From the sequence record NC_041975.1: a stretch of 64,000 bases of DNA; one strand, written 5' to 3'. The notes beneath the pieces are model-generated. The model saw only the letters and a list, made by a program, of their open reading frames with translations, made no database searches and was not told where the DNA came from. Within the stretch, counting starts at the first letter, position 1; every line of letters starts with the position of its first letter. Position numbers and translations under genes: made by a program. Positions 694 through 63,906 of this stretch are shown one piece after another.

Positions 694-729
694 AAAAGAC
701 CAGGGGGCTTACTCCTTGGTCTTTTATGC
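694..729 (+). terminator. hairpin followed by TTTTATGC after the helicase
   Basis: AAAAGACCAGGGGG-CTTA-CTCCTTGGTCTTTT (with G-U pairs), continuing as ATGC. Confidence 0.75.
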
Positions 730-766
730 TTTCTTTCCTTTTCTTTTTGTTAAGGATACACAGCTT

Positions 767-1093
767 ATGAATGGTAACCGGCCAGTAATGGTGATTGGCG
801 GCATGGGGTTGAGTCCTGCATTGATTGAGCGCTTACGACAGTTAGACGACCTGGAGATCAAGTTGGTGGCCGATGTGGCAATCAGTGATATCCTGGAGTT
901 TGAACCGGGTTATGCTCGCGGCTTGGTTCAGGCGATTCAGCATCAGCAACAACGTGAGTGGAATCCCTTCCGGGAAAGCTACTGGGATAACTTCATTACC
1001 CTGCGACGTAAAGAAGTCAACGGACATACCCGCATTCCTCCCAAGAAAGCCACCTGCAGCACCCGTCGTAAGGGACGGAGGTTCAAGGGATGA
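767..1093 (+). CDS. hypothetical protein with basic C-terminal tail
   Basis: ATG at 767 follows a TAAGGA RBS. The track start at 716 lies inside the terminator. Ends RRKGRRFKG. Confidence 0.7.
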   Translation: MNGNRPVMVIGGMGLSPALIERLRQLDDLEIKLVADVAISDILEFEPGYARGLVQAIQHQQQREWNPFRESYWDNFITLRRKEVNGHTRIPPKKATCSTRRKGRRFKG

Positions 1094-1413
1094 GTGAGAT
1101 CGATTATCGTGCATTGAAGTATTGTGTCACCAAGGTTAGTCGACGTATCCGCGACGGAGATTCCCGTAACGCGTCACGTTGCCTCTTCCAGTATGTTGAG
1201 ACGCACGCCGCATTACAAGACATGGCCGCCATTGATCGTCTCTTAGCACAGTGCCGAGAAAATAAGGTACCCCTAAAAGAGATCAACAAAGTCTCGTTAC
1301 TGCGTGCATGCTCATGTTTACGCCCCCACCTTACAGAGTATCAGTCGTGTATGGACCTGTGGCGCCAGGACATTAAAGCGGCGGGTATGGAAAACTTATT
1401 AATAGGATTGTGA
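1090..1413 (+). CDS. hypothetical protein
   Basis: 107-aa ORF with an ATGA overlap to the previous gene. Confidence 0.7.
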   Translation: MSEIDYRALKYCVTKVSRRIRDGDSRNASRCLFQYVETHAALQDMAAIDRLLAQCRENKVPLKEINKVSLLRACSCLRPHLTEYQSCMDLWRQDIKAAGMENLLIGL

Positions 1414-1414
1414 T

Positions 1415-1777
1415 ATGTCTGATTATTGTGCGGATATCTTTAAAGCGATCAGTTGCAAAACCCCCACCAAAGGCAGTGAACTCTACATCGATGATTTCGG
1501 TGATCTGTGGATGTTGATTCCCAAGCTTAACCGCTTCGGTGAGCAGTCAGTGTTTCGTCAGTATGCCGGTAACCTTGCGTTGATGGCTGACCGCGGGCAG
1601 ATGTATCAGGGTCAGTTATATGTGTGTGAGTTGATCCCGGGATATCACTTGGTGTTAACCAACCAAGCCGTGATGGTCAACCAATACAGCCTGGTGCAGT
1701 ATGTGAAGACCCGTGCTGCGAAAGTAGAAGCGCGCTACCGTAAGAAACCCAAGCCGATGAGCCGAGCTTACGCGTAA
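1415..1777 (+). CDS. hypothetical protein
   Basis: 120-aa ORF tightly packed in the operon. Confidence 0.7.
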   Translation: MSDYCADIFKAISCKTPTKGSELYIDDFGDLWMLIPKLNRFGEQSVFRQYAGNLALMADRGQMYQGQLYVCELIPGYHLVLTNQAVMVNQYSLVQYVKTRAAKVEARYRKKPKPMSRAYA

Positions 1778-1807
1778 GCAACCTGACTGACAAGAAAGGA
1801 TAGACCT

Positions 1808-2317
1808 ATGTTCGAATGGTTCTCTGTGTTATTGATGAAGTGGTTGACTCGAAAGGAAAAGAAACACAACAGGACAGTGCGGGTAGAACCGGTGGTGTTT
1901 GAACCGCAACTCAAACCCACCCCGCAGCCGTTGAGTAACGCGTTAAAAGAAGAAGCGCAGCAGATTCGGGACACCCTGCTGTTTGAGTCGCCGTTGAATA
2001 AATCCCGACCGATCCCGACCAAACCCACCTTACGGGTGGTAAGGTCCAGTACAAGCTCCTCACGCCCACACGGTAAGGCGAACGATGACAGTATGCTAAC
2101 ACATGCCTTATTGATGCAGCAGGTGTTAGCAGACGATACAGCGGCGTCTGATCGTCATCATCGTACCCATGCCCCTCAGGATAACCACCGCCATGAAGAC
2201 CGACCCTCGTACCATTCCACGCCCACTCATCATAGCAGCTCTGGTAGTAGTCGCGATGATGATAACGGGAGTAATGATTACAGTAGCGGACCTAGTGACA
2301 GCGGTTCGTCTGATTAA
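1808..2317 (+). CDS. hypothetical protein with His/Ser/Asp-rich disordered C-terminus
   Basis: AAGGA RBS. Ends HSTPTHHSSSGSSRDDDNGSNDYSSGPSDSGSSD. Confidence 0.75.
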   Translation: MFEWFSVLLMKWLTRKEKKHNRTVRVEPVVFEPQLKPTPQPLSNALKEEAQQIRDTLLFESPLNKSRPIPTKPTLRVVRSSTSSSRPHGKANDDSMLTHALLMQQVLADDTAASDRHHRTHAPQDNHRHEDRPSYHSTPTHHSSSGSSRDDDNGSNDYSSGPSDSGSSD

Positions 2318-2356
2318 CACCCTCGATTAACCTTACGTAATAAGGAACGCCTCACC

Positions 2357-3265
2357 ATGACAGATCCCCGCCCCATTCTCGCCGCAGCCATCGGAGAGCC
2401 CCAGGATGACGATTGCTGGGATTTTCCGGGCGAGACTGTTGTTGGTCACGGTGACTTGATGTACACCAACGTCCATAAGCCTCAGGCGTTATGGAATGGT
2501 GTTATCCGGTCACTGCGAAAACGTTTCCTTACTGAACCATCAATTAACCAAAAGGATACTTGTATGACCGAGCAATACAAGCCATTGCCTGACACCGGAT
2601 ACCAAAGCCATGTCTGTGAGCCCGATGTTCTCAACACAAACGACCGGATTTATCCCCGCAAGAGTCTGGTAGCCTTGCTGGAGAAATTCCCCTCCTATAA
2701 TTTTCGTGGAACAACCGTAAAACGCTATCCTTTTATGCGCCGTCTGGCGGTGTTGTTTAAGATAGCGTTCTTACAGACCAGCCTTGACCAGAAGGCTTTA
2801 TCTTTGAATACACGCCAGACCGGTAAGCCACGGATCACGCAACATTCATTAACTGGTATCTGTAATTTAATGCACCAGCTGCATTATGAGCTCAGAGAGC
2901 TTCAGTATCAAAACCCTAATCCGATTGACCTGACCCGTTACCTGAAACTCTTAACCGGTAAGGATGTCTGGGAGAAGCCAAGTGTGGGTGCGTGGGGTAG
3001 TGAATTTACCATGCTCTATTTTCATCATCATCAGGCAGGTGTCGGTAAATCAATGTTCTACAACATGTTGCCAAAGATTAAACTGCACCTGGCGGGTATT
3101 CATGCGACGTTCGGTGGTCAACCATGGATCTATGACAGTAATTGCAGGGGTCCTGCTGGCTTCTGGCCTGCCACGATTGAATACGGCATGGCGCATAATG
3201 GACCGGCCATCACTGCTCAGTTAAATCGCGAGCGTCTGGTGAAACCTAAGAAAGGAAAAGCATAA
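2357..3265 (+). CDS. hypothetical protein
   Basis: 302 aa with a TAAGGA RBS. Contains an isolated AGVGKS motif. Confidence 0.75.
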   Translation: MTDPRPILAAAIGEPQDDDCWDFPGETVVGHGDLMYTNVHKPQALWNGVIRSLRKRFLTEPSINQKDTCMTEQYKPLPDTGYQSHVCEPDVLNTNDRIYPRKSLVALLEKFPSYNFRGTTVKRYPFMRRLAVLFKIAFLQTSLDQKALSLNTRQTGKPRITQHSLTGICNLMHQLHYELRELQYQNPNPIDLTRYLKLLTGKDVWEKPSVGAWGSEFTMLYFHHHQAGVGKSMFYNMLPKIKLHLAGIHATFGGQPWIYDSNCRGPAGFWPATIEYGMAHNGPAITAQLNRERLVKPKKGKA

Positions 3266-4374
3266 TGGCACTGGATCAAGAGTATTATGAAAAGGCATTG
3301 GGCGTCCTACTGACCAAAGGTTTCTCTAACCAAGAAGCTGACCAGATCGCCACCACGCTTTCGGTATATCTCCCGATGCGTTTCATCAAAGCTGGTGTAT
3401 GGACACTCATGCCTTACGACCAGCATCCGGCTGATCCTCTGGCATTTAAACACATGCGGCTACTTGACCGTATCCCTGAGTTAAAGAAACCAGTGATCCT
3501 TCAAATGCCGACTGACTTTACTTACACCACGTATGGCCAGGAGTATTGCCCTGGCGCTGACGCGCCGGTATACACCACAGGGCCTGATGGTTATACACAT
3601 CATCCGGTTGGTTGGGAAAGTGGCATTACTGGCATGCCGGGTGTAATGGGTCCGGCTGGGGATGACAATATTGAAGTCAGTGATCTAACCGGTGATCAAC
3701 CCCAAAACGATATCAGTCAGTTCACCGTTGTCATGCGGGTTGGTGGCAAAGCTATTAAAATGACGTTGGAAGAACTCATCCAGGAAATTGGAGGTTATGA
3801 CAAACTTCCTGCTTCGGCACGTGCCGCGATTGATCGTGTCATGGAAGAGCATCGCAATGCCCCTGTAACTACTATATCTGTGCGTACACCCTTACCAGGC
3901 GGAGTATCTCAGGAGCAAGCTGACTATCTGAAACTGGGCGACCTCAGCGACATCGAAGGGATCAAACGGGCTTACCCGATCATCGACGAGAAAACAGCTG
4001 AACGGATGTCTAAGTTGCATTGTCAGCTTAATCAGCATATCGCGCGGGTTCATCGTGAGCCGAGAGACGTTGAGGTATTTGATCTGCTTGCGGGCGATCA
4101 CTCTCAGCGGATATTCCAATCTCGTCATGCTAAACGTCAGTACCCAAACAGTTTGTTTGAGAAGTTCCTGCCGGATCAAGCCGACATCGATGAACCCGAG
4201 GGCATGACTGTTAAAATCAAAACCCACAGCGTACGTCACTTCGGGCACGGTCTTGAAATTAGCACGCCTTTGTTTGGCCAATCCCACAAAAACCCTACGG
4301 GACCACAAACCATGCCGGGGCTTGAGAAAGGCCGTGATGGTAAACGTAAACGTAATAAGAAGGGCAGACGATGA
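3265..4374 (+). CDS. hypothetical protein with short Gly-X-Y stretch and basic tail
   Basis: 369 aa with a TAATG overlap. Contains GITGMPGVMGPAGDD and ends KGRDGKRKRNKKGRR. Confidence 0.75.
   Translation: MALDQEYYEKALGVLLTKGFSNQEADQIATTLSVYLPMRFIKAGVWTLMPYDQHPADPLAFKHMRLLDRIPELKKPVILQMPTDFTYTTYGQEYCPGADAPVYTTGPDGYTHHPVGWESGITGMPGVMGPAGDDNIEVSDLTGDQPQNDISQFTVVMRVGGKAIKMTLEELIQEIGGYDKLPASARAAIDRVMEEHRNAPVTTISVRTPLPGGVSQEQADYLKLGDLSDIEGIKRAYPIIDEKTAERMSKLHCQLNQHIARVHREPRDVEVFDLLAGDHSQRIFQSRHAKRQYPNSLFEKFLPDQADIDEPEGMTVKIKTHSVRHFGHGLEISTPLFGQSHKNPTGPQTMPGLEKGRDGKRKRNKKGRR
3701..3728 (+). repeat. 28-bp exact direct repeat, copy 1
   Basis: CCCAAAACGATATCAGTCAGTTCACCGT, identical to 17978-18005. 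Confidence 0.9.
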
Positions 4375-5144
4375 TCGATCGCAGTTTTGAAGGTGGCTGG
4401 GAGTCTATACTGCAATGGCATGGGTTTGCTGATCGTGCTAAACAGGGGCTGTCTGAGCACTTTGTTATCGTGGATTACGGAACCCAGGCAGAGGCCGCCG
4501 CTTTTGAGCAATTGACAGCGTTGGCGGAGAAAGTGAAGTATGTCTCAGTCGAGCGGGTTAAAGCCGTTGATTTTACCCCGACGCTTGTACGTACGCTACA
4601 TGAACGTGAACATGGCTGGCATTACTGTCATGTCATGGGGCGATGTGGTTACGGCGGCCACGGGATAATGATTGGTGCCAATGGCGGCTGGACAGGCGCG
4701 CACGGCGGTGCAGGTGATGCAGGTTCGCCCTCAACACCTGATGATGGCTCGATACTATACCAGACAGATTACAGTAGTCCCTGCATCCAGGGCCGAGGAT
4801 TTACTACGCTGCAAGACATGATGGAAAACGCCAGCCCTTACGATTACCCTCGGGAGATTCGTATAGTAGGGGATCGGCATGACCCGGATGTCAAAGCGTT
4901 AACGCAGGCAGTGATAAAGCTTGTTGGGCGTCGAGCCATCAAAGTAGTTAGCATACCGCATCCCGACATGATGTATAGACCCGGCCCGCACCGAACGTAT
5001 AACCTCGCGCTGGAGAAATACCGAGAGCGATTTGACATTGCTTATAAACAAGCATTAGAAAATGTCAACAAGGCGGCTACCCTGCCGTATGCCCGTGGGC
5101 CATTGCAGTCTGTTCTGGCGACTCAACGCAAGAAACACTTTTAA
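4371..5144 (+). CDS. hypothetical protein with Gly-rich segment
   Basis: 257 aa with an ATGA overlap. Confidence 0.75.
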   Translation: MIDRSFEGGWESILQWHGFADRAKQGLSEHFVIVDYGTQAEAAAFEQLTALAEKVKYVSVERVKAVDFTPTLVRTLHEREHGWHYCHVMGRCGYGGHGIMIGANGGWTGAHGGAGDAGSPSTPDDGSILYQTDYSSPCIQGRGFTTLQDMMENASPYDYPREIRIVGDRHDPDVKALTQAVIKLVGRRAIKVVSIPHPDMMYRPGPHRTYNLALEKYRERFDIAYKQALENVNKAATLPYARGPLQSVLATQRKKHF

Positions 5145-5171
5145 TCAGTTCCCCTCAACAGGAGAGTAACC

Positions 5172-5477
5172 ATGTGTAACATGCGATCGGATTGGTTTGT
5201 AGAAGACGAACCGTCCATGAAGGAAAGTGATCCGCATTTCGACAATAAAGCAATGGATGGCTTGATGGCAAAGATCCGTGACTTTGTTAAAGAGAGTGAT
5301 GCGGCGACCTATGTCCCGCAAGCCCTGTTTGGCGAAGCCGGTAAAGTTAACCTGTCCAAAGTGGCAGCAGTAACCCGTCCGGTCGATCACCTCATTACCC
5401 TGAACCCAGTGGCCAATGACGGTGATGTGTATCTGGACTTCGCGCGAGGGAAGCGACGTGGATACAAACCCCACTGA
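5172..5477 (+). CDS. hypothetical protein
   Basis: 101 aa with a GGAGA RBS. Confidence 0.7.
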   Translation: MCNMRSDWFVEDEPSMKESDPHFDNKAMDGLMAKIRDFVKESDAATYVPQALFGEAGKVNLSKVAAVTRPVDHLITLNPVANDGDVYLDFARGKRRGYKPH

Positions 5478-5688
5478 AGTTAACATCGAGCAGACCAATC
5501 GTTATGAGGGGTCTACCGATGATTTGGTCCAGCAAGCTAATGATCGTGGTTTTCTCCAGGGGATTCGTATCACTTCTGGCGAGGACATCGATCCAAGCAT
5601 TTGGACACCTGAGAAGATCGAAAAGTTGAAAGCTGCACTTCGACATATTCGTGACTCAGAACAACGCATCAAAGGTAGCCAGGGGTAA
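5416..5688 (+). CDS. hypothetical protein (start uncertain)
   Basis: The ORF fills the gap up to the hairpin, and its stop lies in the hairpin loop. Confidence 0.55.
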   Translation: MTVMCIWTSREGSDVDTNPTEVNIEQTNRYEGSTDDLVQQANDRGFLQGIRITSGEDIDPSIWTPEKIEKLKAALRHIRDSEQRIKGSQG

Positions 5689-5706
5689 CACCCTGGCTTT
5701 ATGCCG
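5677..5706 (+). terminator. hairpin-TTATGCCG element
   Basis: AGCCAGGG-GTAACA-CCCTGGCT followed by TTATGCCG. Confidence 0.75.
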
Positions 5707-5726
5707 GTTTAACGAGGACGTGTAAC

Positions 5727-6182
5727 ATGGAATCGAGCGGTTTGATTACGCTGGCAATGGTCTTTTTAACCTTCGTCATTGGGTTATGTTGTTGGCTGAC
5801 GCGTTTCATACGCTATCACACCAACCGCTACACCGTTGACACCAAGAAGGCGTTAAAGCAATTTGCCTGCAAGCTTGAACGAGTACTGGATGTCCCGCAG
5901 CCGTATTCGCTGGCACAAAGCGAAATGACAAGGCTGGATAATGAACTGAACGCTTCTCTCTTCCTCTTTGAAGAGATCACAGGGAAGATCCACGATGAAA
6001 CCAGTCGACTGTACCTGGAGTCAAGTTTCATGGTGGTGCGCGGCACTCAACACGATACCCCGATTCGTATCTGTGTGGCGAACACAATCTTCAGCCTGTC
6101 AACGACTAACCACAATCACCACAGCGTCATGAAGGTCATCAACGACTTTAATAACCGCTTGGCTAAAATTGTAGAAAGTTAA
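5727..6182 (+). CDS. N-terminally membrane-anchored hypothetical protein
   Basis: Hydrophobic LITLAMVFLTFVIGLCCWL segment; GAGGA RBS. Confidence 0.7.
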   Translation: MESSGLITLAMVFLTFVIGLCCWLTRFIRYHTNRYTVDTKKALKQFACKLERVLDVPQPYSLAQSEMTRLDNELNASLFLFEEITGKIHDETSRLYLESSFMVVRGTQHDTPIRICVANTIFSLSTTNHNHHSVMKVINDFNNRLAKIVES

Positions 6183-6196
6183 GCACAGAAAAACTC

Positions 6197-6209
6197 AGAC
6201 CTATATCAC
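6197..6209 (+). promoter_or_regulatory. candidate early phage promoter (variant copy)
   Basis: AGACCTATATCAC is a 2-mismatch copy of AGACCTACATTAC and overlaps the inverted repeat TATCACG-CC-CGTGATA. Confidence 0.45.
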
Positions 6210-6257
6210 GCCCGTGATAGACCCCTCATCCCCCATTAATCTTAAGTGAGTTCAATC

Positions 6258-6698
6258 ATGAAATACGTTTACGCTATTATCGCTGTTCTTGGTTTCTCTT
6301 TTGTGTCTGTTGCATTTGCTGCAGATCAAACCAAAGTGGTGAAAGGCTGGTACGCCGAATACAACACGGCTTCGGTCCTGTATTCTGCTGGGCCAAAGAA
6401 AGGACAAGAATTGACCATGGAATGTGTATTAGGTGGTTGGACGTTTGCGTATGCAGACAAGATGGGCGAGGAAGTAAACTCGGTCGATGATGACATGACA
6501 ATCCTGGTCGACGGTGCAGCGTTTGCTGTGCCGAAGACTCAGGGTCAACGTGAGAAGTTATACGCAGCCATTCAGCATGCTAAGAGTGGTATTCAATACA
6601 AAACCCACGCCTATGGTGCGTCGGTAGTATTCCCAGTGGATGGCTTGGCCGAGATGTTTCGTGACCTGCCGTTTGAAGTCAGCCCGTGCATGAGCTAA
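6258..6698 (+). CDS. secreted/periplasmic protein, possibly IalB-like fold
   Basis: Signal peptide MKYVYAIIAVLGFSFVSVAFA|AD, two Cys, and C-terminal FPVDGLAEMFRDL...C. Confidence 0.7.
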   Translation: MKYVYAIIAVLGFSFVSVAFAADQTKVVKGWYAEYNTASVLYSAGPKKGQELTMECVLGGWTFAYADKMGEEVNSVDDDMTILVDGAAFAVPKTQGQREKLYAAIQHAKSGIQYKTHAYGASVVFPVDGLAEMFRDLPFEVSPCMS

Positions 6699-6711
6699 AA
6701 GGAAAACAATT

Positions 6712-7413
6712 GTGATGACTCCTACCAAACAAATTAAACGCAGCTACCGTCTGATCAAAGTGACTGCCGATGTAACACGGGATAACTGGGTCGGGAAAGA
6801 CATCGACTTCATTGTTCAGTCCAATAAAGACATGATCGGTGACACCACACGTGGTGGACCTAATCGCATGCTCGCGACATACATCGTGCTGGGTAACCGC
6901 ATACCTGTAACCGTTAACAGCCATGCGACCATTACCCGGGAAGAAGGCTTGCAGGATCTGCAGGTTAGTATTGTCGATGGTCAGTCAAACTACATTGACA
7001 TCAGTAATGTGCGTTACGTTGTGTCGTGTGAGTTAGAAGAGCACTTCACCTACACCCCACCAAAAGAACCTTCGCTACTTGATCAGCTGGTTGGCGGACC
7101 AATGGGTGACCCAACCCATATGTTCATTATCGATGAAAACTATAACGTCTTTGTCGGTACAGCGAACGATTCACAGGAAGATTATGCCTTGGCTGGTCGT
7201 CTGATCAGTAACCTCGGTTCTCATGATGCTGAAGCTAATGATTTGGAGATTATCGGCAGTTATCCTGATGACCAAGGTGACCACTACTACGTCTCCATTG
7301 ATTGGAACAAGTCATTCATTTCCGGGATTTCCAACAACGAGAAATGCGAATGGTTTAACCAACTCGATGCACTGGTAGCAATGTTGCTGGAAAAGATTAA
7401 AGTTACAGTGTAA
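6712..7413 (+). CDS. hypothetical protein
   Basis: 233 aa with an AAGGA RBS. Confidence 0.75.
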   Translation: MMTPTKQIKRSYRLIKVTADVTRDNWVGKDIDFIVQSNKDMIGDTTRGGPNRMLATYIVLGNRIPVTVNSHATITREEGLQDLQVSIVDGQSNYIDISNVRYVVSCELEEHFTYTPPKEPSLLDQLVGGPMGDPTHMFIIDENYNVFVGTANDSQEDYALAGRLISNLGSHDAEANDLEIIGSYPDDQGDHYYVSIDWNKSFISGISNNEKCEWFNQLDALVAMLLEKIKVTV

Positions 7414-7421
7414 GTAATATC

Positions 7422-8086: not shown

Positions 8087-8096
8087 CGAGGTAGCT

Positions 8097-8500: not shown

Positions 8501-8551
8501 CGGCATATAGGCCCTCCATTACGGAGGGCCTTTTATGACATCTTTTTTTTT
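8501..8551. terminator. mirrored hairpin element at a convergent junction
   Basis: CGGCATAT-AGGCCCTCC-ATTAC-GGAGGGCCT-TTTATGAC, then a T-tract. Confidence 0.8.
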
Positions 8552-8563
8552 TGGTTTACAGCG

Positions 8564-13854: not shown

Positions 13855-13867
13855 AAACCTACATTAT
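13855..13867 (+). promoter_or_regulatory. candidate early phage promoter
   Basis: AAACCTACATTAT, 32 bp upstream of the first island gene. Confidence 0.55.
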
Positions 13868-15415: not shown

Positions 15416-15443
15416 AGGAGAGCTTCGGCTCTCCTTTTATGCC
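15416..15443 (+). terminator. hairpin-TTTATGCC element
   Basis: AGGAGAGC-TTCG-GCTCTCCT followed by TTTATGCC. Confidence 0.8.
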
Positions 15444-15459
15444 CATTAAGGAACATGTC

Positions 15460-20629: not shown

Positions 20630-20680
20630 CAGCATAAGGAGAGGCCTCGCGCCTCTCCTGTTTATGCCGTCTTTTTTTTT
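20630..20680. terminator. mirrored hairpin element at a convergent junction
   Basis: CAGCATA-AGGAGAGGC-CTCGC-GCCTCTCCT-G-TTTATGCCG, then a T-tract. Confidence 0.8.
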
Positions 20681-21775: not shown

Positions 21776-21805
21776 CGGCATAACGGAGCAGGCAACGCCC
21801 ACTCC
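21776..21805 (-). terminator. hairpin-TTATGCCG element (minus strand)
   Basis: The minus strand reads GGAGTGGGC-GTT-GCCTGCTCC-G-TTATGCCG. The stem closes fully only on this strand, using G-U pairs. Confidence 0.7.
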
Positions 21806-22880: not shown

Positions 22881-22924
22881 CGGCATAAGGGAGTGGATAC
22901 CCTGACCGTAGCCAAGGCATCCAC
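22881..22924 (-). terminator. hairpin-TTATGCCG element after the DNA polymerase gene
   Basis: The minus strand reads GTGGATGCCTTGG-CTACGG-TCAGGGTATCCAC-TCCC-TTATGCCG, a 13-bp stem with G-U pairs. Confidence 0.75.
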
Positions 22925-29274: not shown

Positions 29275-29326
29275 CGGCATAAAGGCCTGGCCTTCCTTGC
29301 GGAGGGCCAGAGCCTTGCTTATGCCG
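29275..29326. terminator. mirrored hairpin element at a convergent junction
   Basis: CGGCATAA-AGGC-CTGGCCTTCC-TTGC-GGAGGGCCAG-A-GCCT-TGC-TTATGCCG. The wedge gene stop codon lies inside TTATGCCG. Confidence 0.85.
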
Positions 29327-41849: not shown

Positions 41850-41871
41850 TCGAGTAACTTGACAACCTTAG

Positions 41872-41903
41872 GGGGAGAGGGGTTTCCCTCTCCTCTTATA
41901 CCG
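41872..41903 (+). terminator. hairpin-TTATACCG element (variant)
   Basis: GGGGAGAGGG-GTTT-CCCTCTCCTC followed by TTATACCG. Confidence 0.7.
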
Positions 41904-44263: not shown

Positions 44264-44603
44264 TAACAGTAACAAGGCATTGTACAATGCAGCGCGCTTG
44301 CCTGTTCTTTACGAGTACCCGCATGACTTCACCCCGTATGCCCGTTTACTGGCTAACGAGAAGCAAGGCGCACAACCTTCGCAGGCGTTCGCTGAGATGC
44401 TGGCTAAGGTAACGGGCGATCCCTGGACACTGACCCCTAAACAGCCGTATACCCTGTACGGTGCCAAGGTGACGTTGATTGGTGAGAACCAACCCAACTT
44501 CCCAACCAGTAAACGGTTTCCTTACGTCCTGGTGTTGCAGTTGAGTACCCGGTATCAAGAACGCAAGTTATACCTGAGCTTTAAGATCTTGAAATCGAGC
44601 TGA
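44256..44603 (+). CDS. hypothetical protein
   Basis: ATG 44256 follows GGAGG. Confidence 0.65.
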   Translation: MTDNSNKALYNAARLPVLYEYPHDFTPYARLLANEKQGAQPSQAFAEMLAKVTGDPWTLTPKQPYTLYGAKVTLIGENQPNFPTSKRFPYVLVLQLSTRYQERKLYLSFKILKSS

Positions 44604-44646
44604 GCATAAGGAGAGGGCGTTTGCCCTCTCCTCTATGCCGTTATGC
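44603..44646. terminator. mirrored hairpin element at a convergent junction
   Basis: AGCATA-AGGAGAGGGC-GTTT-GCCCTCTCCT-CTATGCCG-TTATGC. Confidence 0.8.
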
Positions 44647-45342: not shown

Positions 45343-45390
45343 TACGACTCCTTGAAGAATGCTGGGGCTTTCACCCCAGCACAGACGCCG

Positions 45391-48462
<3,072 letters not shown>

Positions 48463-54043: not shown

Positions 54044-54056
54044 AGACCTACATTAT
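54044..54056 (+). promoter_or_regulatory. candidate early phage promoter
   Basis: AGACCTACATTAT, 33 bp upstream of ATG 54090. Confidence 0.55.
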
Positions 54057-57205: not shown

Positions 57206-57209
57206 CTTT

Positions 57210-57243
57210 AAGCAGGAGTAAGGAAACTTACTCCGCTTATGCC
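57210..57243 (+). terminator. hairpin-TTATGCC element
   Basis: AAGCAGGAGTAAG-GAAA-CTTACTCCGCTT followed by ATGCC. Confidence 0.75.
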
Positions 57244-57268
57244 AATTTAATTTAACCGGACGTGTATC

Positions 57269-57679: not shown

Positions 57680-58176
57680 TGGCGAAGATCAATGTCTCGA
57701 ATGCCACGACCTATAAGTTCTTTAAAGAACGTGCAAACCATACACTGCGTCATTTTGCCCAAGATCTTGATCCGGGTATTCTGCCGGTCGTAAGGGAGCT
57801 TAACGCAATAGAAGGCATCGCCCCTGTCTGGAGTTGTGAGTCACACCCTAAAGGTAATGCACATCTTCTTCGCGAGGCATACGTTATCTGTGTGGTCACT
57901 GGGCGGGGGATGGATAAGTTAGAAGAGATCTATAAAGAATGGATGCGGTTGCTAGACCAAGATCGATCATCCTGGCGTAAAGACGATACCGCCCATTCTC
58001 GTAGAAAACGAGTATTTGCTCATCATGTGGTAATCACAACACGTCGCTTGACTTGGCCTAATGACTTCAGTCGCCACTATACCTCTGTCTGTTTAGGGTA
58101 TGAGCGCCTTAATGTCGTCAACAAGCGCTTGGTGCTTCTGTCGTTTGAACAAGCTATCCGTAACGTAACCTTTTAA
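57679..58176 (+). CDS. hypothetical protein with TYW3-like N-terminal motif
   Basis: TAATG overlap; contains LDPGILPVVRELNAIEGIAPVWSCESH. Confidence 0.65.
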   Translation: MAKINVSNATTYKFFKERANHTLRHFAQDLDPGILPVVRELNAIEGIAPVWSCESHPKGNAHLLREAYVICVVTGRGMDKLEEIYKEWMRLLDQDRSSWRKDDTAHSRRKRVFAHHVVITTRRLTWPNDFSRHYTSVCLGYERLNVVNKRLVLLSFEQAIRNVTF

Positions 58177-58183
58177 ACTTAAT

Positions 58184-58233
58184 CGGCATAACCCCCTGAG
58201 AGAGAAGCGCAATGCTTCTCTCTCAGGGATGCC
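58184..58233. terminator. mirrored hairpin element at a convergent junction
   Basis: CGGCATAA-CC-CCCTGAGAGAGAAGC-GCAAT-GCTTCTCTCTCAGGG-ATGCC, a perfect 15-bp stem. Confidence 0.85.
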
Positions 58234-58371
58234 TGAATCTCTTTTTTTTTTAGTCTGGTTAAATATAGTGGATAGAGAATTAACTTGAATAACAAAAAAT
58301 AAAGCAAAGTAATATCAACGCCGGTAAGGGCTACAACAGTTGTTCTAATTTTCAGGCACGTAGCCTAGGAG

Positions 58372-58410
58372 AAAAAAAAGGAGGAAGCAGCTTATCCAGT
58401 TACTTCCTCA
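58372..58410 (-). terminator. intrinsic terminator after the DnaB-like gene
   Basis: The minus strand reads GAGGAAGTAAC-TGGATAA-GCTGCTTCCTC-C-T8. Confidence 0.7.
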
Positions 58411-58450
58411 AAAACGTTATTTCTCGTCGTCCCCATTCTGGGACATAGTA

Positions 58451-59983
58451 TTACCCAAACCACGGAGCTCCACCGCCATCAGAGTTTGTCTCTCCGGCAA
58501 CGTGCTTACGGGATTTGTCCTTTCCATTCACATCATCAAGAATACCGACTCCAGGTTCGAACTTGTAAACGCAATATTTATCACGCTCAGGTGTAATCGA
58601 AATGGTGCGATGCTTACCGCGCTGAATGCACAGATAAGACTCTTCACCAACACGGACAATATGGATAATCATTTCCACATCGACTTCTTGGTCGATCTTG
58701 GTACAGTTATCCCAATAACCTTTATTCGCTGTTTCACGTGGAAGGTCTTCTTCGAGACCGTTACGGACCAGCATCTTCGCAGCAGGACTCAACTGATGCG
58801 GAGTAATGACACAGATACCACGAGCAGACGTAAAGTTACGGACACGACGGAAAAGATCACGGTACTCTTGTCCCGCAACACCTTTCTCGCAACCTTCTTT
58901 ACTGAACATCCCCAGGTAGTCGATGGTTAATAGATGAATCTCATAGCCCATGTTCTCAAAGTGCTTAATACGCTCAAAGAGATTACGGTAACCAAACTGC
59001 GACGGGTTAACACGACAGAAGTTGACTTCATAGCCGTTAACAGATAAGGCGGCTAAGACTTCACGGGCTGCTTCCGCTTCATCTACTGTCTGATGGTTAT
59101 GATCCAGGCCATCGATGTTTGCTTTGATCTTCTTCCACCACAGAACCATGTTGTCGGTCATGTTGTTTTCAGAAGAGATGTGCATGATCATCGGTTTCTT
59201 CTTCGGATCACGCATGTACGGTTTGTTAAAGGTGGCGATCTGACGTGTCAGGTCCATGGTGAAGCCGGTCTTGTTGTTGTGCTGCAATGCACCAATCAAG
59301 ACGAACTCACTGCGACGGAACCCGCCCACTTCACCCAGCATGCGGTTGATACCGGTGTAACCTGTCTTTAATACACCAAGCGTAGAAGACTCTTCTTTCG
59401 CTTGCTTAAAGATCTTACCCACTTCTTCCAGGTTACTGACTGTAATGTCAGAGATCACCGCTGGGTCAAACTGTTCAGAGACACCGATGTTAACCGTTTC
59501 GATCTCTTCTAAGAGCTTGACCACCGCAGAATCCATGTCGATGTCTTCACCGCCAAAGATGATAGGTGCTGCAAACCGCTTGATGATAGCCTTCGCCCGA
59601 CGGTGCTGATCCCACTTACGCAGTTCACGTCCAATGGCGACTACAGACTGTTTGGCTTTGTAAGGATCATCCTCGGTGCTGCTGACGCCCATTTCTAAGG
59701 CTTGGTAAGTTGCCGCGTCATGGCCGCAGTCAGTTAACAAGCGTTGAAGCAGATCAGTTTTATCCAGTGGTTGATTCTTAGGACGACTAATCATCCAGCG
59801 AATAGTACGGCGTAAAGCCAGCTGTACATTGCGGGATTCGTCATCACCTGTACCTTCAACAGGGGTCGGAATGTTATCCAGGAGCTCATCAACGAACTCA
59901 CTGCTATCATCGCTGTCAGTGCCAACAATGGACTCTTGATAAAATAACGTAATAATCTTTATGAGTAATAGAACGGTTTCCAT
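58451..59983 (-). CDS. dnaB: DnaB-like replicative helicase (phiKZ gp118-like)
   Basis: LKTGYTGINRMLG..GGFRR, Walker A-like GALQHNNKT, Walker B LLTIDYL and motif ITPHQLS. GAGGGG RBS before ATG 59983. Confidence 0.85.
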   Translation of the reverse strand: METVLLLIKIITLFYQESIVGTDSDDSSEFVDELLDNIPTPVEGTGDDESRNVQLALRRTIRWMISRPKNQPLDKTDLLQRLLTDCGHDAATYQALEMGVSSTEDDPYKAKQSVVAIGRELRKWDQHRRAKAIIKRFAAPIIFGGEDIDMDSAVVKLLEEIETVNIGVSEQFDPAVISDITVSNLEEVGKIFKQAKEESSTLGVLKTGYTGINRMLGEVGGFRRSEFVLIGALQHNNKTGFTMDLTRQIATFNKPYMRDPKKKPMIMHISSENNMTDNMVLWWKKIKANIDGLDHNHQTVDEAEAAREVLAALSVNGYEVNFCRVNPSQFGYRNLFERIKHFENMGYEIHLLTIDYLGMFSKEGCEKGVAGQEYRDLFRRVRNFTSARGICVITPHQLSPAAKMLVRNGLEEDLPRETANKGYWDNCTKIDQEVDVEMIIHIVRVGEESYLCIQRGKHRTISITPERDKYCVYKFEPGVGILDDVNGKDKSRKHVAGETNSDGGGAPWFG

Positions 59984-60011
59984 TATGCCCCTCGTTATAA
60001 GGTAATTAACC

Positions 60012-60641
60012 ATGTACAATGAAAAGTTGGTAATTGTGCCAGCGCCAATCCTTCGGGCTATTCACAATGCAAAAGAAAGTGAAGCAATTTTAACGTGTCC
60101 GAAAAGAATGCTTTCCATATTATCCAGACGTGATGTCATTTTCTACTACGTGGTGAATACTCTTCTTTGTGACTATTCCTATAAAGCAGACCCAGCCAAC
60201 CCAGAACCACCGTTGGTGTCGGCACTGCGGGATCTGTTGTCACACACTAACGGCGTAATGAATGCCTTTACCTCACCGGCGTGGGTTGCGTTTGTTGATG
60301 AGAACGACGCTGATATCCAAAGCGAGCGTCGACTGAAAGCGCGTAGTATCTATGAGTACCTGACTGGTGAACCATATGCATGGAATTCAACAGAAGGTGA
60401 CGATTCTTTAAGCTATATCTATGACACCCAGGCGAAAGTCGTGGGAGGTGAAGCCGTTGCAGTGTTGATTAATGCTGTGAAGGAGAACGATAGTTACAAT
60501 ATCATCAGTCATCAACGTTTATTCGAACAAACCATTCTGGCGTTCACTACACTGACAGCAGACACCAAAAGCTTTGCTTCCCTTTATAAAGGCTTTTGTG
60601 AACTGGTTTACCAAGACTCGCTAATCCGACGTTTTGCGTAA
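60012..60641 (+). CDS. putative minor capsid protein (phiKZ gp119 position)
   Basis: 209 aa between the helicase and the major capsid protein, matching phiKZ order. Confidence 0.55.
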   Translation: MYNEKLVIVPAPILRAIHNAKESEAILTCPKRMLSILSRRDVIFYYVVNTLLCDYSYKADPANPEPPLVSALRDLLSHTNGVMNAFTSPAWVAFVDENDADIQSERRLKARSIYEYLTGEPYAWNSTEGDDSLSYIYDTQAKVVGGEAVAVLINAVKENDSYNIISHQRLFEQTILAFTTLTADTKSFASLYKGFCELVYQDSLIRRFA

Positions 60642-60783
60642 GAATCTATGTAATAGTATGTAAATTGCCATTTCGATGGCGGCGTACTGTTATGACCGTG
60701 TGTTAGCGCGACACAACCCCCTGTTTATGTACATAGACAGGTAATATCGAAAACTTATATAAGTTATTGAAGGAAACAACGAA

Positions 60784-63051
60784 ATGGCATTGAAACTTCT
60801 GCATGTAGCTAAAACCGCCGACATGCTGTCACGCATCCAATCTCAGATCAATGGCGGCCATGCATCAGGCGACGCTACCGCGGTTAAAAGCTACGGTATG
60901 GAGTCGCTTGACGGCAGCAGTCTGGGCGCGCAGGAAACCGCCATCAAAAATGGTATCTCTGTCATTACCGACGTGATCGCTCAGGGCACTGCATCTCAGG
61001 GCCAGAGCTACGCCGGTAACGGTCTGGAAGGTTTCTCTGATGCACAGATCCAAGCGGCATCAATCGCACTGACCATCGGTGGTGACTTCCAGGGTTACAT
61101 CGGTGCACTGAAAAACAACGCTAACCGTGCCATGTCTGCATCTGACCTGAGCCTGGTTTCCGGTAGCCGTTACGGCTCTGCTAACATGAAGCAGGGTTAC
61201 GGTACCGAAGCTTTCGAACAGGCGCAGAGCTTTGTTCCTCAGCAGAACGCAACGGTTGAATACAACCTGAAAGCGGCTAAGCAGGATGCCGTTGGTGAAG
61301 CCTTCTTCCCAACTACTACCCTGACGCCAAACGACATCGGCCTGAGCGTAACTGTGCCGGTTGACATCGTTGAACCTTTCATCAAGCACAAAGCAAATGG
61401 CGAAGTGACGGATTGGCAGCGTAAGAAGCTCATCAACGCAATGCGTGACCCGACCATTCTGCGTAACGACGCGATCAAGCTGATTCCTTATCGTCCACTG
61501 GACGGCAGCAACGACGCACAGTTCGCAGTAGGCGTGCCGAAGTTCAACGAAATTCAGGGCGGCGAAGAAGTACCAACTGGTGCGCTGAAGCCTGGTATCA
61601 AAATCGGTTTCATGGGTCTGTGCTCTACTCCGTCTCTGGTTCAGGCCGGCGCGCTGGAAGCATCTGATCAGATCGACACCGGTGCTCGTCTGCAGTACAT
61701 CTGGATCGAAGTAGCTAACGCCTCTGGCACCAAAGAGCTGTTCAAGCTGCGTACTGATCACCTGGATCGTTCTACTTTCCAGAAATCTCAGGAAGGCGAT
61801 AAGTTCGAGACGTCTCTGGACTTCTCTAATATCACCATCGCGCTGAACGACCTGAACAAAACCACCGACAACACCGATTCAGCTCTGCTGGCTCCGTTGG
61901 TGACTTCTGGTCAGCAAGCGATCCTGGCGCTGGATATCAAAGGCACCATGAACCACGAGAAAGGCAGCCTGGTAGTTAACTCGCTGACTAACCCGTCTAT
62001 CATCCGTGTTTACGATACCGTGGCTAAAGAAGATGCGAACACCAAGTCTGGTGCTCTGCGTGACGCAATCGACGCTCTGACGATCACCTTCAAAGGTTAC
62101 TTCGTCCGCGCTAACCTGCGTAACAGCAACTTCCGTACCCGCGAGCAGCGTGTTGACCGCCAGACTTCCGTGTACAAGTACATGGTACAGCTGGGCGCAC
62201 CAATCACTGCTATCGCTCCAGTAACTGACGCATGGGGCCCGAAAGAGTCTATCGCAGTTGAAACCCTGAGCAACGCAACGTATGCACGTAACTCCGCAAT
62301 GGCTATCAGCCGTCTGCTGGACTACGTTGAAACCATCCGTGATGCAGGCGTGACCAACAACGGTCTGTGGCAGCGTTACGATGAGAACAGCATCGAAGGC
62401 GTTGGTAAAGCTGTAGTTGATCCATGGTACGGCGAAGGTAGCTTTGACATCTCTAAAGTTGTCAACGGTGTTAAATCTTCTCAGACCCGCGATGACGTTT
62501 CTGAAAAGATCCTGAACATCCTGCGTACCTACGCATACCGCATGAACGCCGAGTCTGGCTACAACGTTGCACTGCAGATGCTGTACAACGAAGTTCAGCC
62601 AACGCTGGTTATCGCAACCGACAACATCATCGCGCAGTACCTGATGGAAGTTGGTGACCTCCGCACAGCTGGTATCAGCTTCAAAGTGCACGTGGCCACC
62701 ACCAACAACATCGAGATGCGCGGCAAGATCATCATGACCCTGTCTCGTATGAAGTCAGGCGGTCTGGATCTGCTGACGTTCGGTATGCACCTGTGGGTGC
62801 CTGAGATCGTAGCAACTGTTAACGTAATGCGTAACGGTACCTACATCGAAGAAACCATGGTGCAGCCGCGTAACCTGCACGTAGTGGTTTGCCCAATCGT
62901 GGCGAACATCACCATCACCGGTCTGGAAGATGCGTACACTGGCAAGATCACCGTCCCAGTTGACGTTGTGAGCATGCCTGAGTCTGCTGGCGCCCAAGAC
63001 CTGGGTGGTCTGAACACTACTCCGGCAACTACTACCAACCCTGCTGCGTAA
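60784..63051 (+). CDS. major capsid protein (phiKZ gp120-like)
   Basis: 755 aa with strongly biased codon usage and an AAGGA RBS. Propeptide sites GME40, GLE82 and GTE142. Follows DnaB and the gp119-like gene. Confidence 0.9.
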   Translation: MALKLLHVAKTADMLSRIQSQINGGHASGDATAVKSYGMESLDGSSLGAQETAIKNGISVITDVIAQGTASQGQSYAGNGLEGFSDAQIQAASIALTIGGDFQGYIGALKNNANRAMSASDLSLVSGSRYGSANMKQGYGTEAFEQAQSFVPQQNATVEYNLKAAKQDAVGEAFFPTTTLTPNDIGLSVTVPVDIVEPFIKHKANGEVTDWQRKKLINAMRDPTILRNDAIKLIPYRPLDGSNDAQFAVGVPKFNEIQGGEEVPTGALKPGIKIGFMGLCSTPSLVQAGALEASDQIDTGARLQYIWIEVANASGTKELFKLRTDHLDRSTFQKSQEGDKFETSLDFSNITIALNDLNKTTDNTDSALLAPLVTSGQQAILALDIKGTMNHEKGSLVVNSLTNPSIIRVYDTVAKEDANTKSGALRDAIDALTITFKGYFVRANLRNSNFRTREQRVDRQTSVYKYMVQLGAPITAIAPVTDAWGPKESIAVETLSNATYARNSAMAISRLLDYVETIRDAGVTNNGLWQRYDENSIEGVGKAVVDPWYGEGSFDISKVVNGVKSSQTRDDVSEKILNILRTYAYRMNAESGYNVALQMLYNEVQPTLVIATDNIIAQYLMEVGDLRTAGISFKVHVATTNNIEMRGKIIMTLSRMKSGGLDLLTFGMHLWVPEIVATVNVMRNGTYIEETMVQPRNLHVVVCPIVANITITGLEDAYTGKITVPVDVVSMPESAGAQDLGGLNTTPATTTNPAA

Positions 63052-63078
63052 GCACCAGGCGCGAGAGTAATCCGTAGC

Positions 63079-63118
63079 GCATAAACAGAGGAGGAGCAAT
63101 GCTCCTCCTCTTATGCCG
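63079..63118 (+). terminator. hairpin-TTATGCCG element after the major capsid gene
   Basis: GCATAA-AC-AGAGGAGGAGC-AAT-GCTCCTCCTCT-TATGCCG. Confidence 0.85.
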
Positions 63119-63156
63119 TGTGATTTTATAGAGGCACACACCAGGGGCGGATAGTA

Positions 63157-63870
63157 ATGCTTGAATTACTAATGATAGGAAGGAAGAAAGCAACAGGGGG
63201 TGGGATACCTGCGGATCTTGGACCAGGACCTGCCTCCATGCTTGGGTATTACGAGCGACCGGATGGCGGTAACTCAGGGTACTTCGGTACCTTTACTAAT
63301 TTTGTTTCAACAGCTGGGTTATGTCAATCTATCGGGTTAACTGCAGGTTACCAGCAAGTTGAGAATGCCACTTGGCATAAGTTTCTGTTAGATGGTAAGA
63401 TCCTCTTTATACCAACCAACTATATTGTGCGTAACCTCCATTGGAACTACATTTATAATGCCGGTGCGGTGTATGGCGATGACAGTTTTGGTGTTTATCA
63501 AAGCCCAACGCCAACAGCACAGAGTGCCAAGCATGTTACCGTGGATGGTCGGGTTTATCGTGTGCGGTTAGTATCTATCTCAAATGGTGATCCGGCTCTG
63601 ACAGGCCAAATCGATAAAACCACCGAATGGGGTCGGTTGATGTATCCGATTGATCCAACAGTCGATGCTAGTAATACTGAAGCGGGTAAGAAATGGGGTA
63701 ACGTGGGACTGCTTTTGAGTTCAACGCAGATTCTGGCAAAGGAGACCTACGCCAGCACACCTGCTAGTAGCCTGGTTGTGGTTACGAATTCTACGACACG
63801 CTCCGCTCAATCTAAATCATCCGCACCCAGTAACTGTACCTGGCGTCCGATTCTTGAACTTGTGCAGTAA
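63157..63870 (+). CDS. putative virion structural protein
   Basis: Starts MLELLMIG. Contains GYFG...GLC..IGLTAG...WHKFLLDGKILFIP...RPILELV. Confidence 0.75.
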   Translation: MLELLMIGRKKATGGGIPADLGPGPASMLGYYERPDGGNSGYFGTFTNFVSTAGLCQSIGLTAGYQQVENATWHKFLLDGKILFIPTNYIVRNLHWNYIYNAGAVYGDDSFGVYQSPTPTAQSAKHVTVDGRVYRVRLVSISNGDPALTGQIDKTTEWGRLMYPIDPTVDASNTEAGKKWGNVGLLLSSTQILAKETYASTPASSLVVVTNSTTRSAQSKSSAPSNCTWRPILELVQ

Positions 63871-63875
63871 GCTCT

Positions 63876-63906
63876 GAGAGGAAGGCTCCGGCCTCCTCTT
63901 ATGCCG
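63876..63906 (+). terminator. hairpin-TTATGCCG element
   Basis: GAGAGGAAGGC-TCCG-GCCTCCTCTT followed by ATGCCG. Confidence 0.75.

What the first reader, a model, noticed from the sequence alone, without database searches (positions are those of the whole stretch)
694..63906. Genome-wide hairpin + TTATGCCG element, mirrored at convergent junctions: candidate phage-RNAP-specific terminator or processing signal
Seen: about 14 intergenic GC-rich hairpins are followed directly by (T)TATG(C/A)C(G). Plus strand: 694, 5677, 8509, 15416, 20637, 29283, 41872 (TATA variant), 44609, 57210, 63087, 63876. Minus strand: 21805, 22924, 58228. The stems differ in sequence while the tail is conserved. At 21776 and 22881 the stems close fully only on the transcribed strand via G-U pairs, which points to an RNA structure. 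At all five convergent junctions (8501, 20630, 29275, 44603, 58184) the complement (CG)GCATA also flanks the left side, so each incoming strand meets hairpin then (T)ATG(C/A)C. Known: TATG is the phiKZ late promoter core read by the non-virion RNAP, and N4 vRNAP uses hairpin promoters. Inference: the mirrored copies have no sense gene downstream, which favours a terminator or 3'-end signal in which UUAUGCCG replaces the U-tract. Copies between tandem genes could also restart late transcription.
Basis: partly seen in the sequence, partly recalled or inferred. Interest (0 to 1): 0.8.

Follow-up and report, generated by a model that had tools for sequence, protein, structure and literature searches.

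The report
phiKZ-type terminators in Erwinia jumbo phage
The repeated "hairpin plus TTATGCCG" signals are this Erwinia jumbo phage's version of a transcription-stop motif already mapped by RNA sequencing in the related phages phiKZ and 201phi2-1, so the pattern is real but mostly already known.

Summary
The window is the last 64 kb of Erwinia phage vB_EamM_Special G, a phiKZ-like jumbo phage. All 14 listed hairpins exist and fold well. The octamer TTATGCCG occurs 9 times in the window (1.7 expected) and 41 times in the genome (about 7 expected), almost always right after a GC-rich hairpin.

Context fits a terminator:
- In tandem gene junctions about 30 copies are sense and 3 antisense.
- 17 of 18 convergent junctions carry copies, usually on both strands.
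- None of 18 divergent junctions does.
- Stems tolerate G·U only on the transcribed strand.
- In phage AH06 (about 76% identical), tails are kept at 12 of 13 junctions while stems change with pairing preserved.

Published ONT-cappable-seq work already reports this motif, a stem-loop followed by a TTAT-containing tail, at 61 mapped phiKZ terminators and 59 in 201phi2-1. This is therefore a new member of a known kind, undescribed for the genus Agricanvirus.

The restart-promoter idea is not supported. The CCG extension occurs only next to hairpins, and a TATA variant is conserved. A separate promoter-like motif also lies downstream of many tails.

The tail follows phage lineage, not host, so its reader is probably phage-encoded. 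That step is inferred, not shown.

The parts
695..731 (+). Hairpin 695-724 plus weak tail 724-731 (TTATGCTT), followed by a T-rich stretch. Lies after the helicase gene gp254. Atypical copy.
   Evidence: (z -6.3). The tail is not kept in AH06, while the stem and T-rich tract are.
5677..5706 (+). Hairpin 5677-5698 plus tail 5699-5706 (TTATGCCG). Tandem junction gp263|gp264.
   Evidence: Stem and tail are kept in AH06, with one change to a G·U pair.
8501..8552 (.). Bidirectional copy at convergent junction gp268|gp269. Minus-strand tail 8501-8508, hairpin 8509-8531, plus-strand tail 8533-8540, T10 run 8543-8552.
   Evidence: A compensatory C-G to U-A change in AH06, with both tails kept.
15416..15444 (+). 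Hairpin 15416-15435 plus tail 15437-15444 (TTATGCCC). Tandem junction gp277|gp278.
   Evidence: Kept in AH06.
20630..20680 (.). Bidirectional copy at convergent junction gp285|gp286. Minus tail 20630-20637, hairpin 20637-20659, plus tail 20662-20669, T9 run 20672-20680.
   Evidence: AH06 has an extra stem pair and a different loop, with both tails kept.
21776..21805 (-). Hairpin 21785-21805 plus tail 21776-21783, on the minus strand between gp288 and gp287 (both minus-strand genes). Two G·U pairs.
   Evidence: In AH06 the stem sequence is replaced but pairing and tail are kept, within an otherwise unalignable gap.
22881..22924 (-). Hairpin 22893-22924 plus tail 22881-22888, on the minus strand after the DNA polymerase gene gp289. 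Two G·U pairs.
29275..29326 (.). Bidirectional copy at convergent junction gp293|gp294. Minus tail 29275-29282, long hairpin about 29283-29316, plus tail 29319-29326. The two tails can pair with each other.
   Evidence: (z -6.5). The hairpin tip is inverted in AH06 and both tails are kept.
41871..41903 (+). Hairpin 41871-41896 plus tail 41896-41903 with the TATA variant (TTATACCG). Tandem junction gp302|gp303.
   Evidence: The TATA variant is kept in AH06.
44602..44640 (.). Bidirectional copy at convergent junction gp304|gp305. Minus tail 44602-44609, hairpin 44609-44632, plus tail 44633-44640.
   Evidence: The loop is inverted in AH06. The same stem recurs at record positions 119750 and 154923.
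57215..57244 (+). Hairpin 57215-57234 plus tail 57237-57244 (TTATGCCA). Tandem junction gp316|gp317.
   Evidence: A compensatory A-U to G-C change in AH06, with the tail kept.
58184..58251 (.). Copy at convergent junction gp318|gp319. Minus tail 58184-58191 and a 16-pair hairpin 58193-58229. The plus side has only a degenerate tail, followed by a T10 run at 58242-58251.
   Evidence: (z -6.8). Kept in AH06.
63087..63118 (+). Hairpin 63087-63111 plus tail 63111-63118, after the major capsid gene gp321. A partial mirrored copy lies on the left flank.
   Evidence: The stem is changed in AH06 with pairing and tail kept.
63877..63906 (+). Hairpin 63877-63899 plus tail 63899-63906, after gp322. A separate promoter-like 9-mer follows at 63925-63933.

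Best explanation
These are factor-independent transcription terminators of the phiKZ type. As the phage's own multisubunit RNA polymerase transcribes past a gene end, the GC-rich hairpin forms in the nascent RNA. The transcript then ends in or just after the tail (UUAUGCCG in RNA).

Between convergent genes one palindromic hairpin carries a tail on each strand, so it stops transcription from both sides.

What is shown here: the sequence architecture, its enrichment, its gene-end and sense-strand placement, its single-strand (RNA-like) pairing bias, and its conservation.

What is shown elsewhere for relatives: RNA 3' ends map to this motif.

What is inferred: that 3' ends form here in this phage; that the conserved part of the tail beyond the U-rich start is read by a phage-encoded component, most likely the polymerase; and that the T8-10 runs after many plus-strand copies are an added reinforcing module.
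For: - Identity: the window is Erwinia phage Special G, a phiKZ-like jumbo phage. It carries a phage-type RNA polymerase beta-subunit gene.
- Published motif: ONT-cappable-seq of phiKZ found 133 terminators. Of these, 61 share a stem-loop followed by a TTAT-containing tail, and six are bidirectional between convergent genes. 201phi2-1 motif A (n=59) resembles it, and 15 of its terminators are bidirectional.
- Same tails in relatives: my own scan of KTN4 (phiKZ species) and 201phi2-1 finds the same kind of tail after hairpins.
- Enrichment: 41 exact octamers genome-wide against 7.4 expected, and nearly all follow a strong hairpin.
- CCG extension: CCG follows the core at 36 of 87 hairpin-associated intergenic copies, against 3 of 82 hairpin-less ones.
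- Placement: about 30 sense against 3 antisense copies in tandem junctions. Copies at 17 of 18 convergent junctions and 0 of 18 divergent ones.
- RNA-like pairing: G·U against A·C on the tail strand of tandem copies is 15:1, 11:1 or 7:1 depending on threshold (p 0.0005 to 0.07). Bidirectional copies show 3:3 in 307 pairs.
- Conservation: in AH06, tails are kept at 12 of 13 junctions, with two compensatory double changes, several G·U single changes and one full stem replacement.
- Lineage, not host: tails are present in 12 phiKZ-like phages and absent in SPN3US, Machina and Goslar. Machina shares the host of Special G.
Against: - No RNA-end data exist for any Agricanvirus phage, so termination here rests on analogy.
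- 3' ends mapped by long-read RNA sequencing in relatives cannot by themselves separate termination from processing back to a stable hairpin.
- The G/C-rich second half of the tail would make a stronger RNA-DNA hybrid than a U-tract, which does not fit the canonical release mechanism.
- The G·U bias loses significance at the strictest detection threshold (p=0.07).
- G·T wobble is also tolerated in single-stranded DNA, so a non-template-strand DNA hairpin is not formally excluded.
Confidence: 0.8

Rival explanations
1. Dual cassette: the hairpin terminates, and the 4-base core inside the tail is a late promoter from which the non-virion polymerase restarts. Tandem copies would then both end one transcript and begin the next.
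For: - The tail contains the 4-base late-promoter core reported for phiKZ, with its G as the start site.
- Tandem copies lie 20-130 nt upstream of the next start codon.
- The gap orthologous to the phiKZ p119L promoter region carries TTATGCCC without a hairpin at window 59984-59991.
Against: - Tails are mirrored at convergent junctions, where no sense gene follows, and absent from all 18 divergent junctions, where promoters must exist.
- The CCG extension is confined to hairpin-associated copies. phiKZ late promoters show no conservation downstream of the core, and the core in the p119L region of KTN4 and 201phi2-1 is followed by different bases.
- A TATA variant is conserved between Special G and AH06, although every core base is needed for initiation in phiKZ.
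- Tails precede many non-structural genes.
- A distinct promoter-like 9-mer often lies 20-30 nt downstream of the tail.
- The window 59984 copy is not conserved in pEa_SNUABM_48.
Confidence: 0.15
2. RNA processing or stability signal. Transcripts read through, a nuclease cuts in or near the tail, and the hairpin then protects the new 3' end. The mapped 3' ends in relatives would be processed ends, not termination points.
For: - Long-read 3'-end mapping does not by itself separate termination from processing (methods).
- The tail is conserved beyond what a simple U-rich release tract needs.
- The genome encodes a ribonuclease, gp149.
Against: - The published terminators were called only where read coverage dropped by at least 20% across the site.
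- Several 201phi2-1 terminators worked in a reporter-based terminator trap in the uninfected host.
- The tail follows phage lineage, not host, so a host nuclease such as RNase E is an unlikely reader.
- Tight abutment of the tail to the stem (0-5 nt in most copies; up to 9 nt at 29319) is what a terminator needs.
Confidence: 0.1
3. DNA-level element: a palindrome plus a protein-binding word used in replication, recombination, packaging or genome organisation rather than in RNA.
For: The elements are palindromic and spread over the whole genome. Hairpin tips are inverted between related phages, and identical stems recur at several loci, which suggests DNA-level exchange. The phage encodes SbcCD-like hairpin nucleases.
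Against: - Orientation follows the direction of transcription.
- G·U pairs are tolerated only on the transcribed strand in tandem copies and avoided in bidirectional ones.
- Stems vary freely while pairing is kept.
- RNA 3' ends map to the motif in relatives.
Confidence: 0.03

Closest known systems
Conserved terminator motif of Pseudomonas phage phiKZ (Putzeys et al. 2024, PMC10914365)
   Same: A GC-rich stem-loop directly followed by a tail that begins TTAT, continues with G or T and two pyrimidines, and then G. It lies after genes, with bidirectional copies between convergent genes, in a genome that encodes its own multisubunit RNA polymerases.
   Different: - After the core, Special G shows C at 67%, C at 63% and G at 62% of hairpin-associated copies. 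KTN4 (phiKZ species) shows T 67%, C 53% and G 60%.
- Stem polarity is reversed: the 5' arm is purine-rich here and pyrimidine-rich in phiKZ.
- Many plus-strand copies here add a T8-10 run.
- No RNA-end data exist for this phage.
Terminator motif A (and the A/B combination) of Pseudomonas phage 201phi2-1 (PMC11512511)
   Same: Motif A is described as strongly resembling the phiKZ motif. 15 of its terminators are bidirectional. Adding motif B lengthens the hairpin, which may correspond to the mirrored left-flank copy that pairs with the tail here. That correspondence is inferred.
   Different: The motif logos are not available as text here, so the A/B correspondence could not be checked. The host and genus differ.
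Canonical bacterial intrinsic (Rho-independent) terminator
   Same: A GC-rich hairpin in the nascent RNA followed at once by a U-rich start. Bidirectional versions exist in which the two flanks are complementary.
   Different: A conserved G/C-containing word replaces the distal U-tract. Only 3 of the 14 window loci have a long T run, and it lies after the tail. The related phages SPN3US and Machina do use plain T-rich flanks.
[quoted passage not shown]
   Same: The same four bases occur inside the tail.
   Different: Late promoters have no conserved downstream bases and no reported hairpin. The tails have a conserved extension, always abut a hairpin, avoid divergent junctions and tolerate a conserved TATA variant.

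Membership tests
phiKZ-type conserved terminator motif | GC-rich stem-loop immediately followed by a TTAT-containing tail with a conserved extension | tested here: met
   14 window loci. 41 exact octamers genome-wide, nearly all after hairpins. The extension is specific to hairpin copies.
phiKZ-type conserved terminator motif | Placed after genes in sense orientation, with bidirectional copies between convergent genes | tested here: met
   About 30 sense vs 3 antisense copies. 17 of 18 convergent and 0 of 18 divergent junctions carry copies.
phiKZ-type conserved terminator motif | Host genome is a phiKZ-like phage with its own multisubunit RNA polymerases | tested here: met
   PhiKZ_MCP and phiKZ_IP Pfam hits. 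gp274 matches the PHROG RNA polymerase beta subunit family at E=3e-167. Further RNAP subunits are annotated as deposited.
phiKZ-type conserved terminator motif | RNA 3' ends map at the element, with a drop in read coverage | not testable with these tools
   No transcriptome exists for any Agricanvirus phage in the searched literature. The supplementary tables of the phiKZ and 201phi2-1 papers are not held.
Canonical intrinsic terminator | Uninterrupted U-tract directly after the stem | tested here: not met
   The tail has only 3-4 T in its 8 bases. T8-10 runs occur at 3 of 14 window loci and lie after the tail.
phiKZ late promoter | All four core bases present; each is required for initiation in phiKZ | tested here: inconclusive
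   The core is present at 13 of 14 loci. The TATA variant at 41897 is conserved in AH06.
phiKZ late promoter | No conserved bases downstream of the core; occurs wherever late genes start, including divergent gaps | tested here: not met
   The CCG extension is conserved. No hairpin-plus-tail element lies at any of the 18 divergent junctions; one hairpin-less near-copy of the octamer sits in the gap at window 59984-59991. The p119L-region core in KTN4 and 201phi2-1 has different following bases.
phiKZ late promoter | Primary 5' ends start at the G of the core | not testable with these tools
   No RNA-end data are available for this phage.
N4-type hairpin promoter | Hairpin lies upstream of the genes it drives (early genes) | tested here: not met
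   The elements lie at gene ends and between convergent genes, never at divergent junctions.

The most novel reading that the evidence does not exclude
The tail would be a sequence-specific pause-and-release word. [quoted passage not shown] One four-base word would then mark both the start and, when preceded by a hairpin and followed by its extension, the end of transcription. The T8-10 runs, found almost only on the plus strand together with the plus-strand-only promoter-like 9-mer, would be a second module serving the other (virion) polymerase. Lineages without the tail (SPN3US, Machina, Goslar) would differ in that pocket.
Probability: 0.15. Interest if true: 0.7.

Novelty: new member of a known kind. 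Interest (0 to 1): 0.3.

Why it matters
For this genus it gives the first map of transcription-unit ends. There are about 60 terminators genome-wide and 14 loci in the window, and the genus paper had looked for motifs without following any up.

More broadly, the data show three things:
- The tail is conserved across distant phiKZ-like genera on different hosts, yet absent from one clade that shares a host.
- The structure acts on the transcribed strand.
- The conserved extension distinguishes terminator copies of the 4-base core from promoter copies.

These points sharpen an open question in the field: how polymerases that recognise only a 4-base promoter word tell starts from stops. None of this changes the basic picture already published for phiKZ.

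Tried and rejected
- **Covariance model of the paralogous copies.** MAFFT alignment A1 could not hold stems of different length and loop size in one pairing register, so I dropped it and compared orthologs with AH06 instead.
- **Wide locus harvest with a capsid-protein alignment (A2).** I fetched named phages one by one instead.
- **Supplementary start-site and termination-site tables** of the phiKZ and 201phi2-1 papers are not held. I therefore could not check where 3' ends fall relative to the tail, or whether start sites coincide with tails. The original phiKZ transcriptome paper is not held either.
- **Rfam:** no family matches.
- **First G·U vs A·C count.** It used an element list built with a rule that already tolerated G·U. 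I repeated it with strand-symmetric detection, and the bias persists but is weaker at the strictest threshold.
- **Gene mask.** My greedy ORF mask mis-calls some short genes, so junction classes were taken from the deposited annotation.
- **ChmC reader idea.** ChmC, the phage-nucleus RNA-binding protein, binds near start codons with no motif found. That gives no support for ChmC reading the tail.
Full report
**What the window is.** The window is identical to bases 209225-273224 of Erwinia phage vB_EamM_Special G (273,224 bp, genus Agricanvirus). It encodes a phiKZ-type major capsid protein and phiKZ-type internal head proteins. It also encodes a phage RNA polymerase beta-subunit homologue. The host is a plant-pathogenic bacterium, and the virus is a bacteriophage.

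**Checking the observation.**
- Each folds better than its dinucleotide shuffles, with z from -2.0 to -6.8.
- Exact TTATGCCG occurs 9 times in the window against 1.66 expected, and all nine copies abut listed hairpins.
- The 6-base core alone is not enriched.
- I fetched the rest of the genome in separate pieces and scanned them apart. There are 41 exact octamers against about 7.4 expected. Of these, 32 have an upstream fold in the best 2% of random windows, and most of the rest fall just above that cut-off.
- Of 66 intergenic perfect-stem hairpin loci, 42 carry a tail on at least one strand.

The pattern is real.

**Context.** All genes lie on the plus strand except 18 minus-strand clusters.
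- Hairpin-plus-tail copies are sense-oriented in tandem junctions, about 30 against 3.
- They occur at 17 of the 18 convergent junctions, usually on both strands.
- They occur at none of the 18 divergent junctions.

Promoters must exist in divergent gaps, so the element is not a general promoter.

**The structure acts on the transcribed strand.** With a strand-symmetric search, stems of tandem copies contain G·U pairs on the tail strand far more often than A·C. The ratio is 15:1, 11:1 or 7:1 depending on the score threshold (p = 0.0005, 0.006, 0.07). Bidirectional copies, which must fold on both strands, show 3:3 in 307 pairs. A first count on a list built with a G·U-tolerant rule was biased, and I repeated it.

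**Conservation.** Phage AH06 is syntenic and about 76% identical in flanking DNA. Comparing 13 orthologous junctions:
- The tail is kept at 12, all but site 694.
- Stems show two compensatory double changes (8509, 57210).
- Four single changes involve a G·U pair on the sense strand (5677, 15416, 41872, 22924).
- There is one added pair (20637) and one complete stem replacement with pairing preserved (21805).
- Two hairpin tips are inverted (29283, 44609).

**What is already known.** The 4-base late-promoter core of phiKZ, with its G as the start site, is taken here from papers, not from the finding. Putzeys et al. 2024 mapped 133 phiKZ terminators by ONT-cappable-seq. Of these, 61 share a stem-loop followed by a TTAT-containing tail, and six are bidirectional between convergent genes. 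The 201phi2-1 study found a closely similar motif at 59 terminators, with 15 terminators called bidirectional overall. My scan of KTN4 (phiKZ species) and 201phi2-1 shows the same kind of tail after hairpins. For Agricanvirus no promoter or terminator has been described. The genus paper ran a motif search and did not pursue it. The finding is therefore the Agricanvirus member of a published terminator class.

**Is the tail also a promoter?** Several results argue against it.
- After the core, CCG follows at 36 of 87 hairpin-associated intergenic copies, but at only 3 of 82 hairpin-less ones.
- phiKZ late promoters have no conserved bases downstream of the core, and every core base is needed for initiation.
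- In the p119L promoter region of KTN4 and 201phi2-1, the core is followed by different bases.
- The TATA variant at 41897 is conserved in AH06.
- A separate 9-mer lies 20-30 nt downstream of many tails. It reads CCTACATTA at window 13858-13866, 54047-54055 and 63925-63933, with a one-base variant elsewhere. It occurs 19 times, always on the plus strand, and looks like the real promoter there.

One hairpin-less near-copy of the octamer lies in the gap orthologous to the phiKZ p119L region (window 59984-59991). It is not conserved in pEa_SNUABM_48. A restart function cannot be excluded, but nothing requires it.

**Distribution.** The share of intergenic hairpins with the core starting 1-7 nt after the stem is as follows (chance is about 5%).

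| Phage | Hairpins with tail |
|---|---|
| Special G (window) | 7/9 |
| AH06 | 5/7 |
| pEa_SNUABM_48 | 1/2 |
| KTN4 (phiKZ species) | 11/17 |
| 201phi2-1 | 6/10 |
| Xoo-sp14 | 6/9 |
| RP12 | 6/12 |
| RSL2 | 4/11 |
| Moabite | 5/9 |
| FBKp24 | 4/6 |
| PhiEaH1 | 6/8 |
| Vibrio phage Yong XC32 | 1/6 |
| SPN3US | 0/14 |
| Machina | 0/11 |
| Goslar | 0/3 |

Several of the negative-lineage hairpins have T-rich flanks instead: SPN3US 10 of 14, Machina 8 of 11, Goslar 1 of 3. Machina and Special G infect the same host. The tail therefore follows phage lineage rather than host, which points to a phage-encoded reader. This is an inference.

**Mechanism.**
- Shown: architecture, placement, strand bias and conservation.
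- Shown in relatives: RNA 3' ends at the motif.
- Inferred: the hairpin forms in the nascent RNA, the U-rich start of the tail weakens the hybrid, and the conserved extension is read by the phage polymerase or another phage factor.

A speculative version is that the non-template-strand pocket of the beta-like subunit, which binds the promoter core, also captures the core inside the tail and pauses the enzyme.

T8-10 runs follow many plus-strand copies. There are 20 such runs on the plus strand against 3 on the minus strand. They are concentrated at the boundary with minus-strand clusters: 12 of 20 T-run-bearing terminators against 5 of 35 tail-only ones (Fisher p = 0.0007). This fits a reinforcing stop, or a module for the second polymerase.

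**Verdict.** The novelty is limited to a new genus, plus some refinements: the strand bias, the promoter-versus-terminator context of the core, and the lineage distribution.

Noticed in passing
window 13858-13866, 54047-54055, 63925-63933 (and 16 more copies elsewhere in the genome): The 9-mer CCTACATTA, or its variant with T at the fifth base, occurs 19 times in the genome. All copies are on the plus strand and 14 are intergenic (by the ORF mask). It usually lies 30-70 nt upstream of a plus-strand gene and often 20-30 nt after a terminator tail. It is a candidate early or middle promoter of this genus, and its ATTAC part recalls the phiKZ middle-promoter motif printed in PMC4666361.
   Followed up: partly
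window 8543-8552, 20672-20680, 58242-58251: Runs of 8 or more T are strongly strand-biased genome-wide: 20 on the plus strand against 3 on the minus strand, nearly all intergenic. About half directly follow a hairpin-plus-tail. T-run-bearing terminators cluster where plus-strand genes meet a minus-strand cluster (12 of 20 against 5 of 35 tail-only copies, p=0.0007).
   Followed up: partly
window 29283-29316 and 44609-44632; record positions 119750, 154923, 253833 and 96538, 172143, 272311: Hairpin tips are inverted between Special G and AH06 at two junctions. Identical stems recur at three separate loci each within Special G, sometimes with the loop flipped. This suggests exchange or copying among terminators.
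   Followed up: partly
window-wide, compared with L008 (KTN4) and L010 (201phi2-1): Stem polarity is opposite. In Special G the 5' arm is purine-rich and the 3' arm pyrimidine-rich. In the Pseudomonas phages the 5' arm is pyrimidine-rich.
   Followed up: no
L011 (SPN3US), L019 (Machina), L012 (Goslar): These phiKZ-like phages lack the tail after hairpins. SPN3US and Machina mostly have T-rich flanks instead (10 of 14 and 8 of 11 hairpins); Goslar has only three such hairpins, one of them T-rich. Machina infects the same host as Special G.
   Followed up: partly
window 59984-59991: TTATGCCC lies without a hairpin in the 30-nt divergent gap between the DnaB-like helicase gene and gp320. This gap is orthologous to the phiKZ p119L late-promoter region. 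The octamer overlaps the helicase start codon on the other strand and is not conserved in pEa_SNUABM_48.
   Followed up: partly
window 45360-45381: A hairpin with an 8-pair stem lies between the minus-strand genes gp305 and gp306 and has no tail on either strand.
   Followed up: no
window 45391-48462 (minus strand): The annotated tail fibre protein gp306 (1023 aa) contains seven matched stretches of collagen triple-helix repeat, Pfam PF01391, E=6e-51.
   Followed up: no
outside the window: record positions 102830 and 193143: Two hairpin-less intergenic copies of the 4-base core share the same longer surrounding context (cagacctaTATGac). Several other intergenic copies are followed by ACT. This may be a further promoter class.
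   Followed up: no
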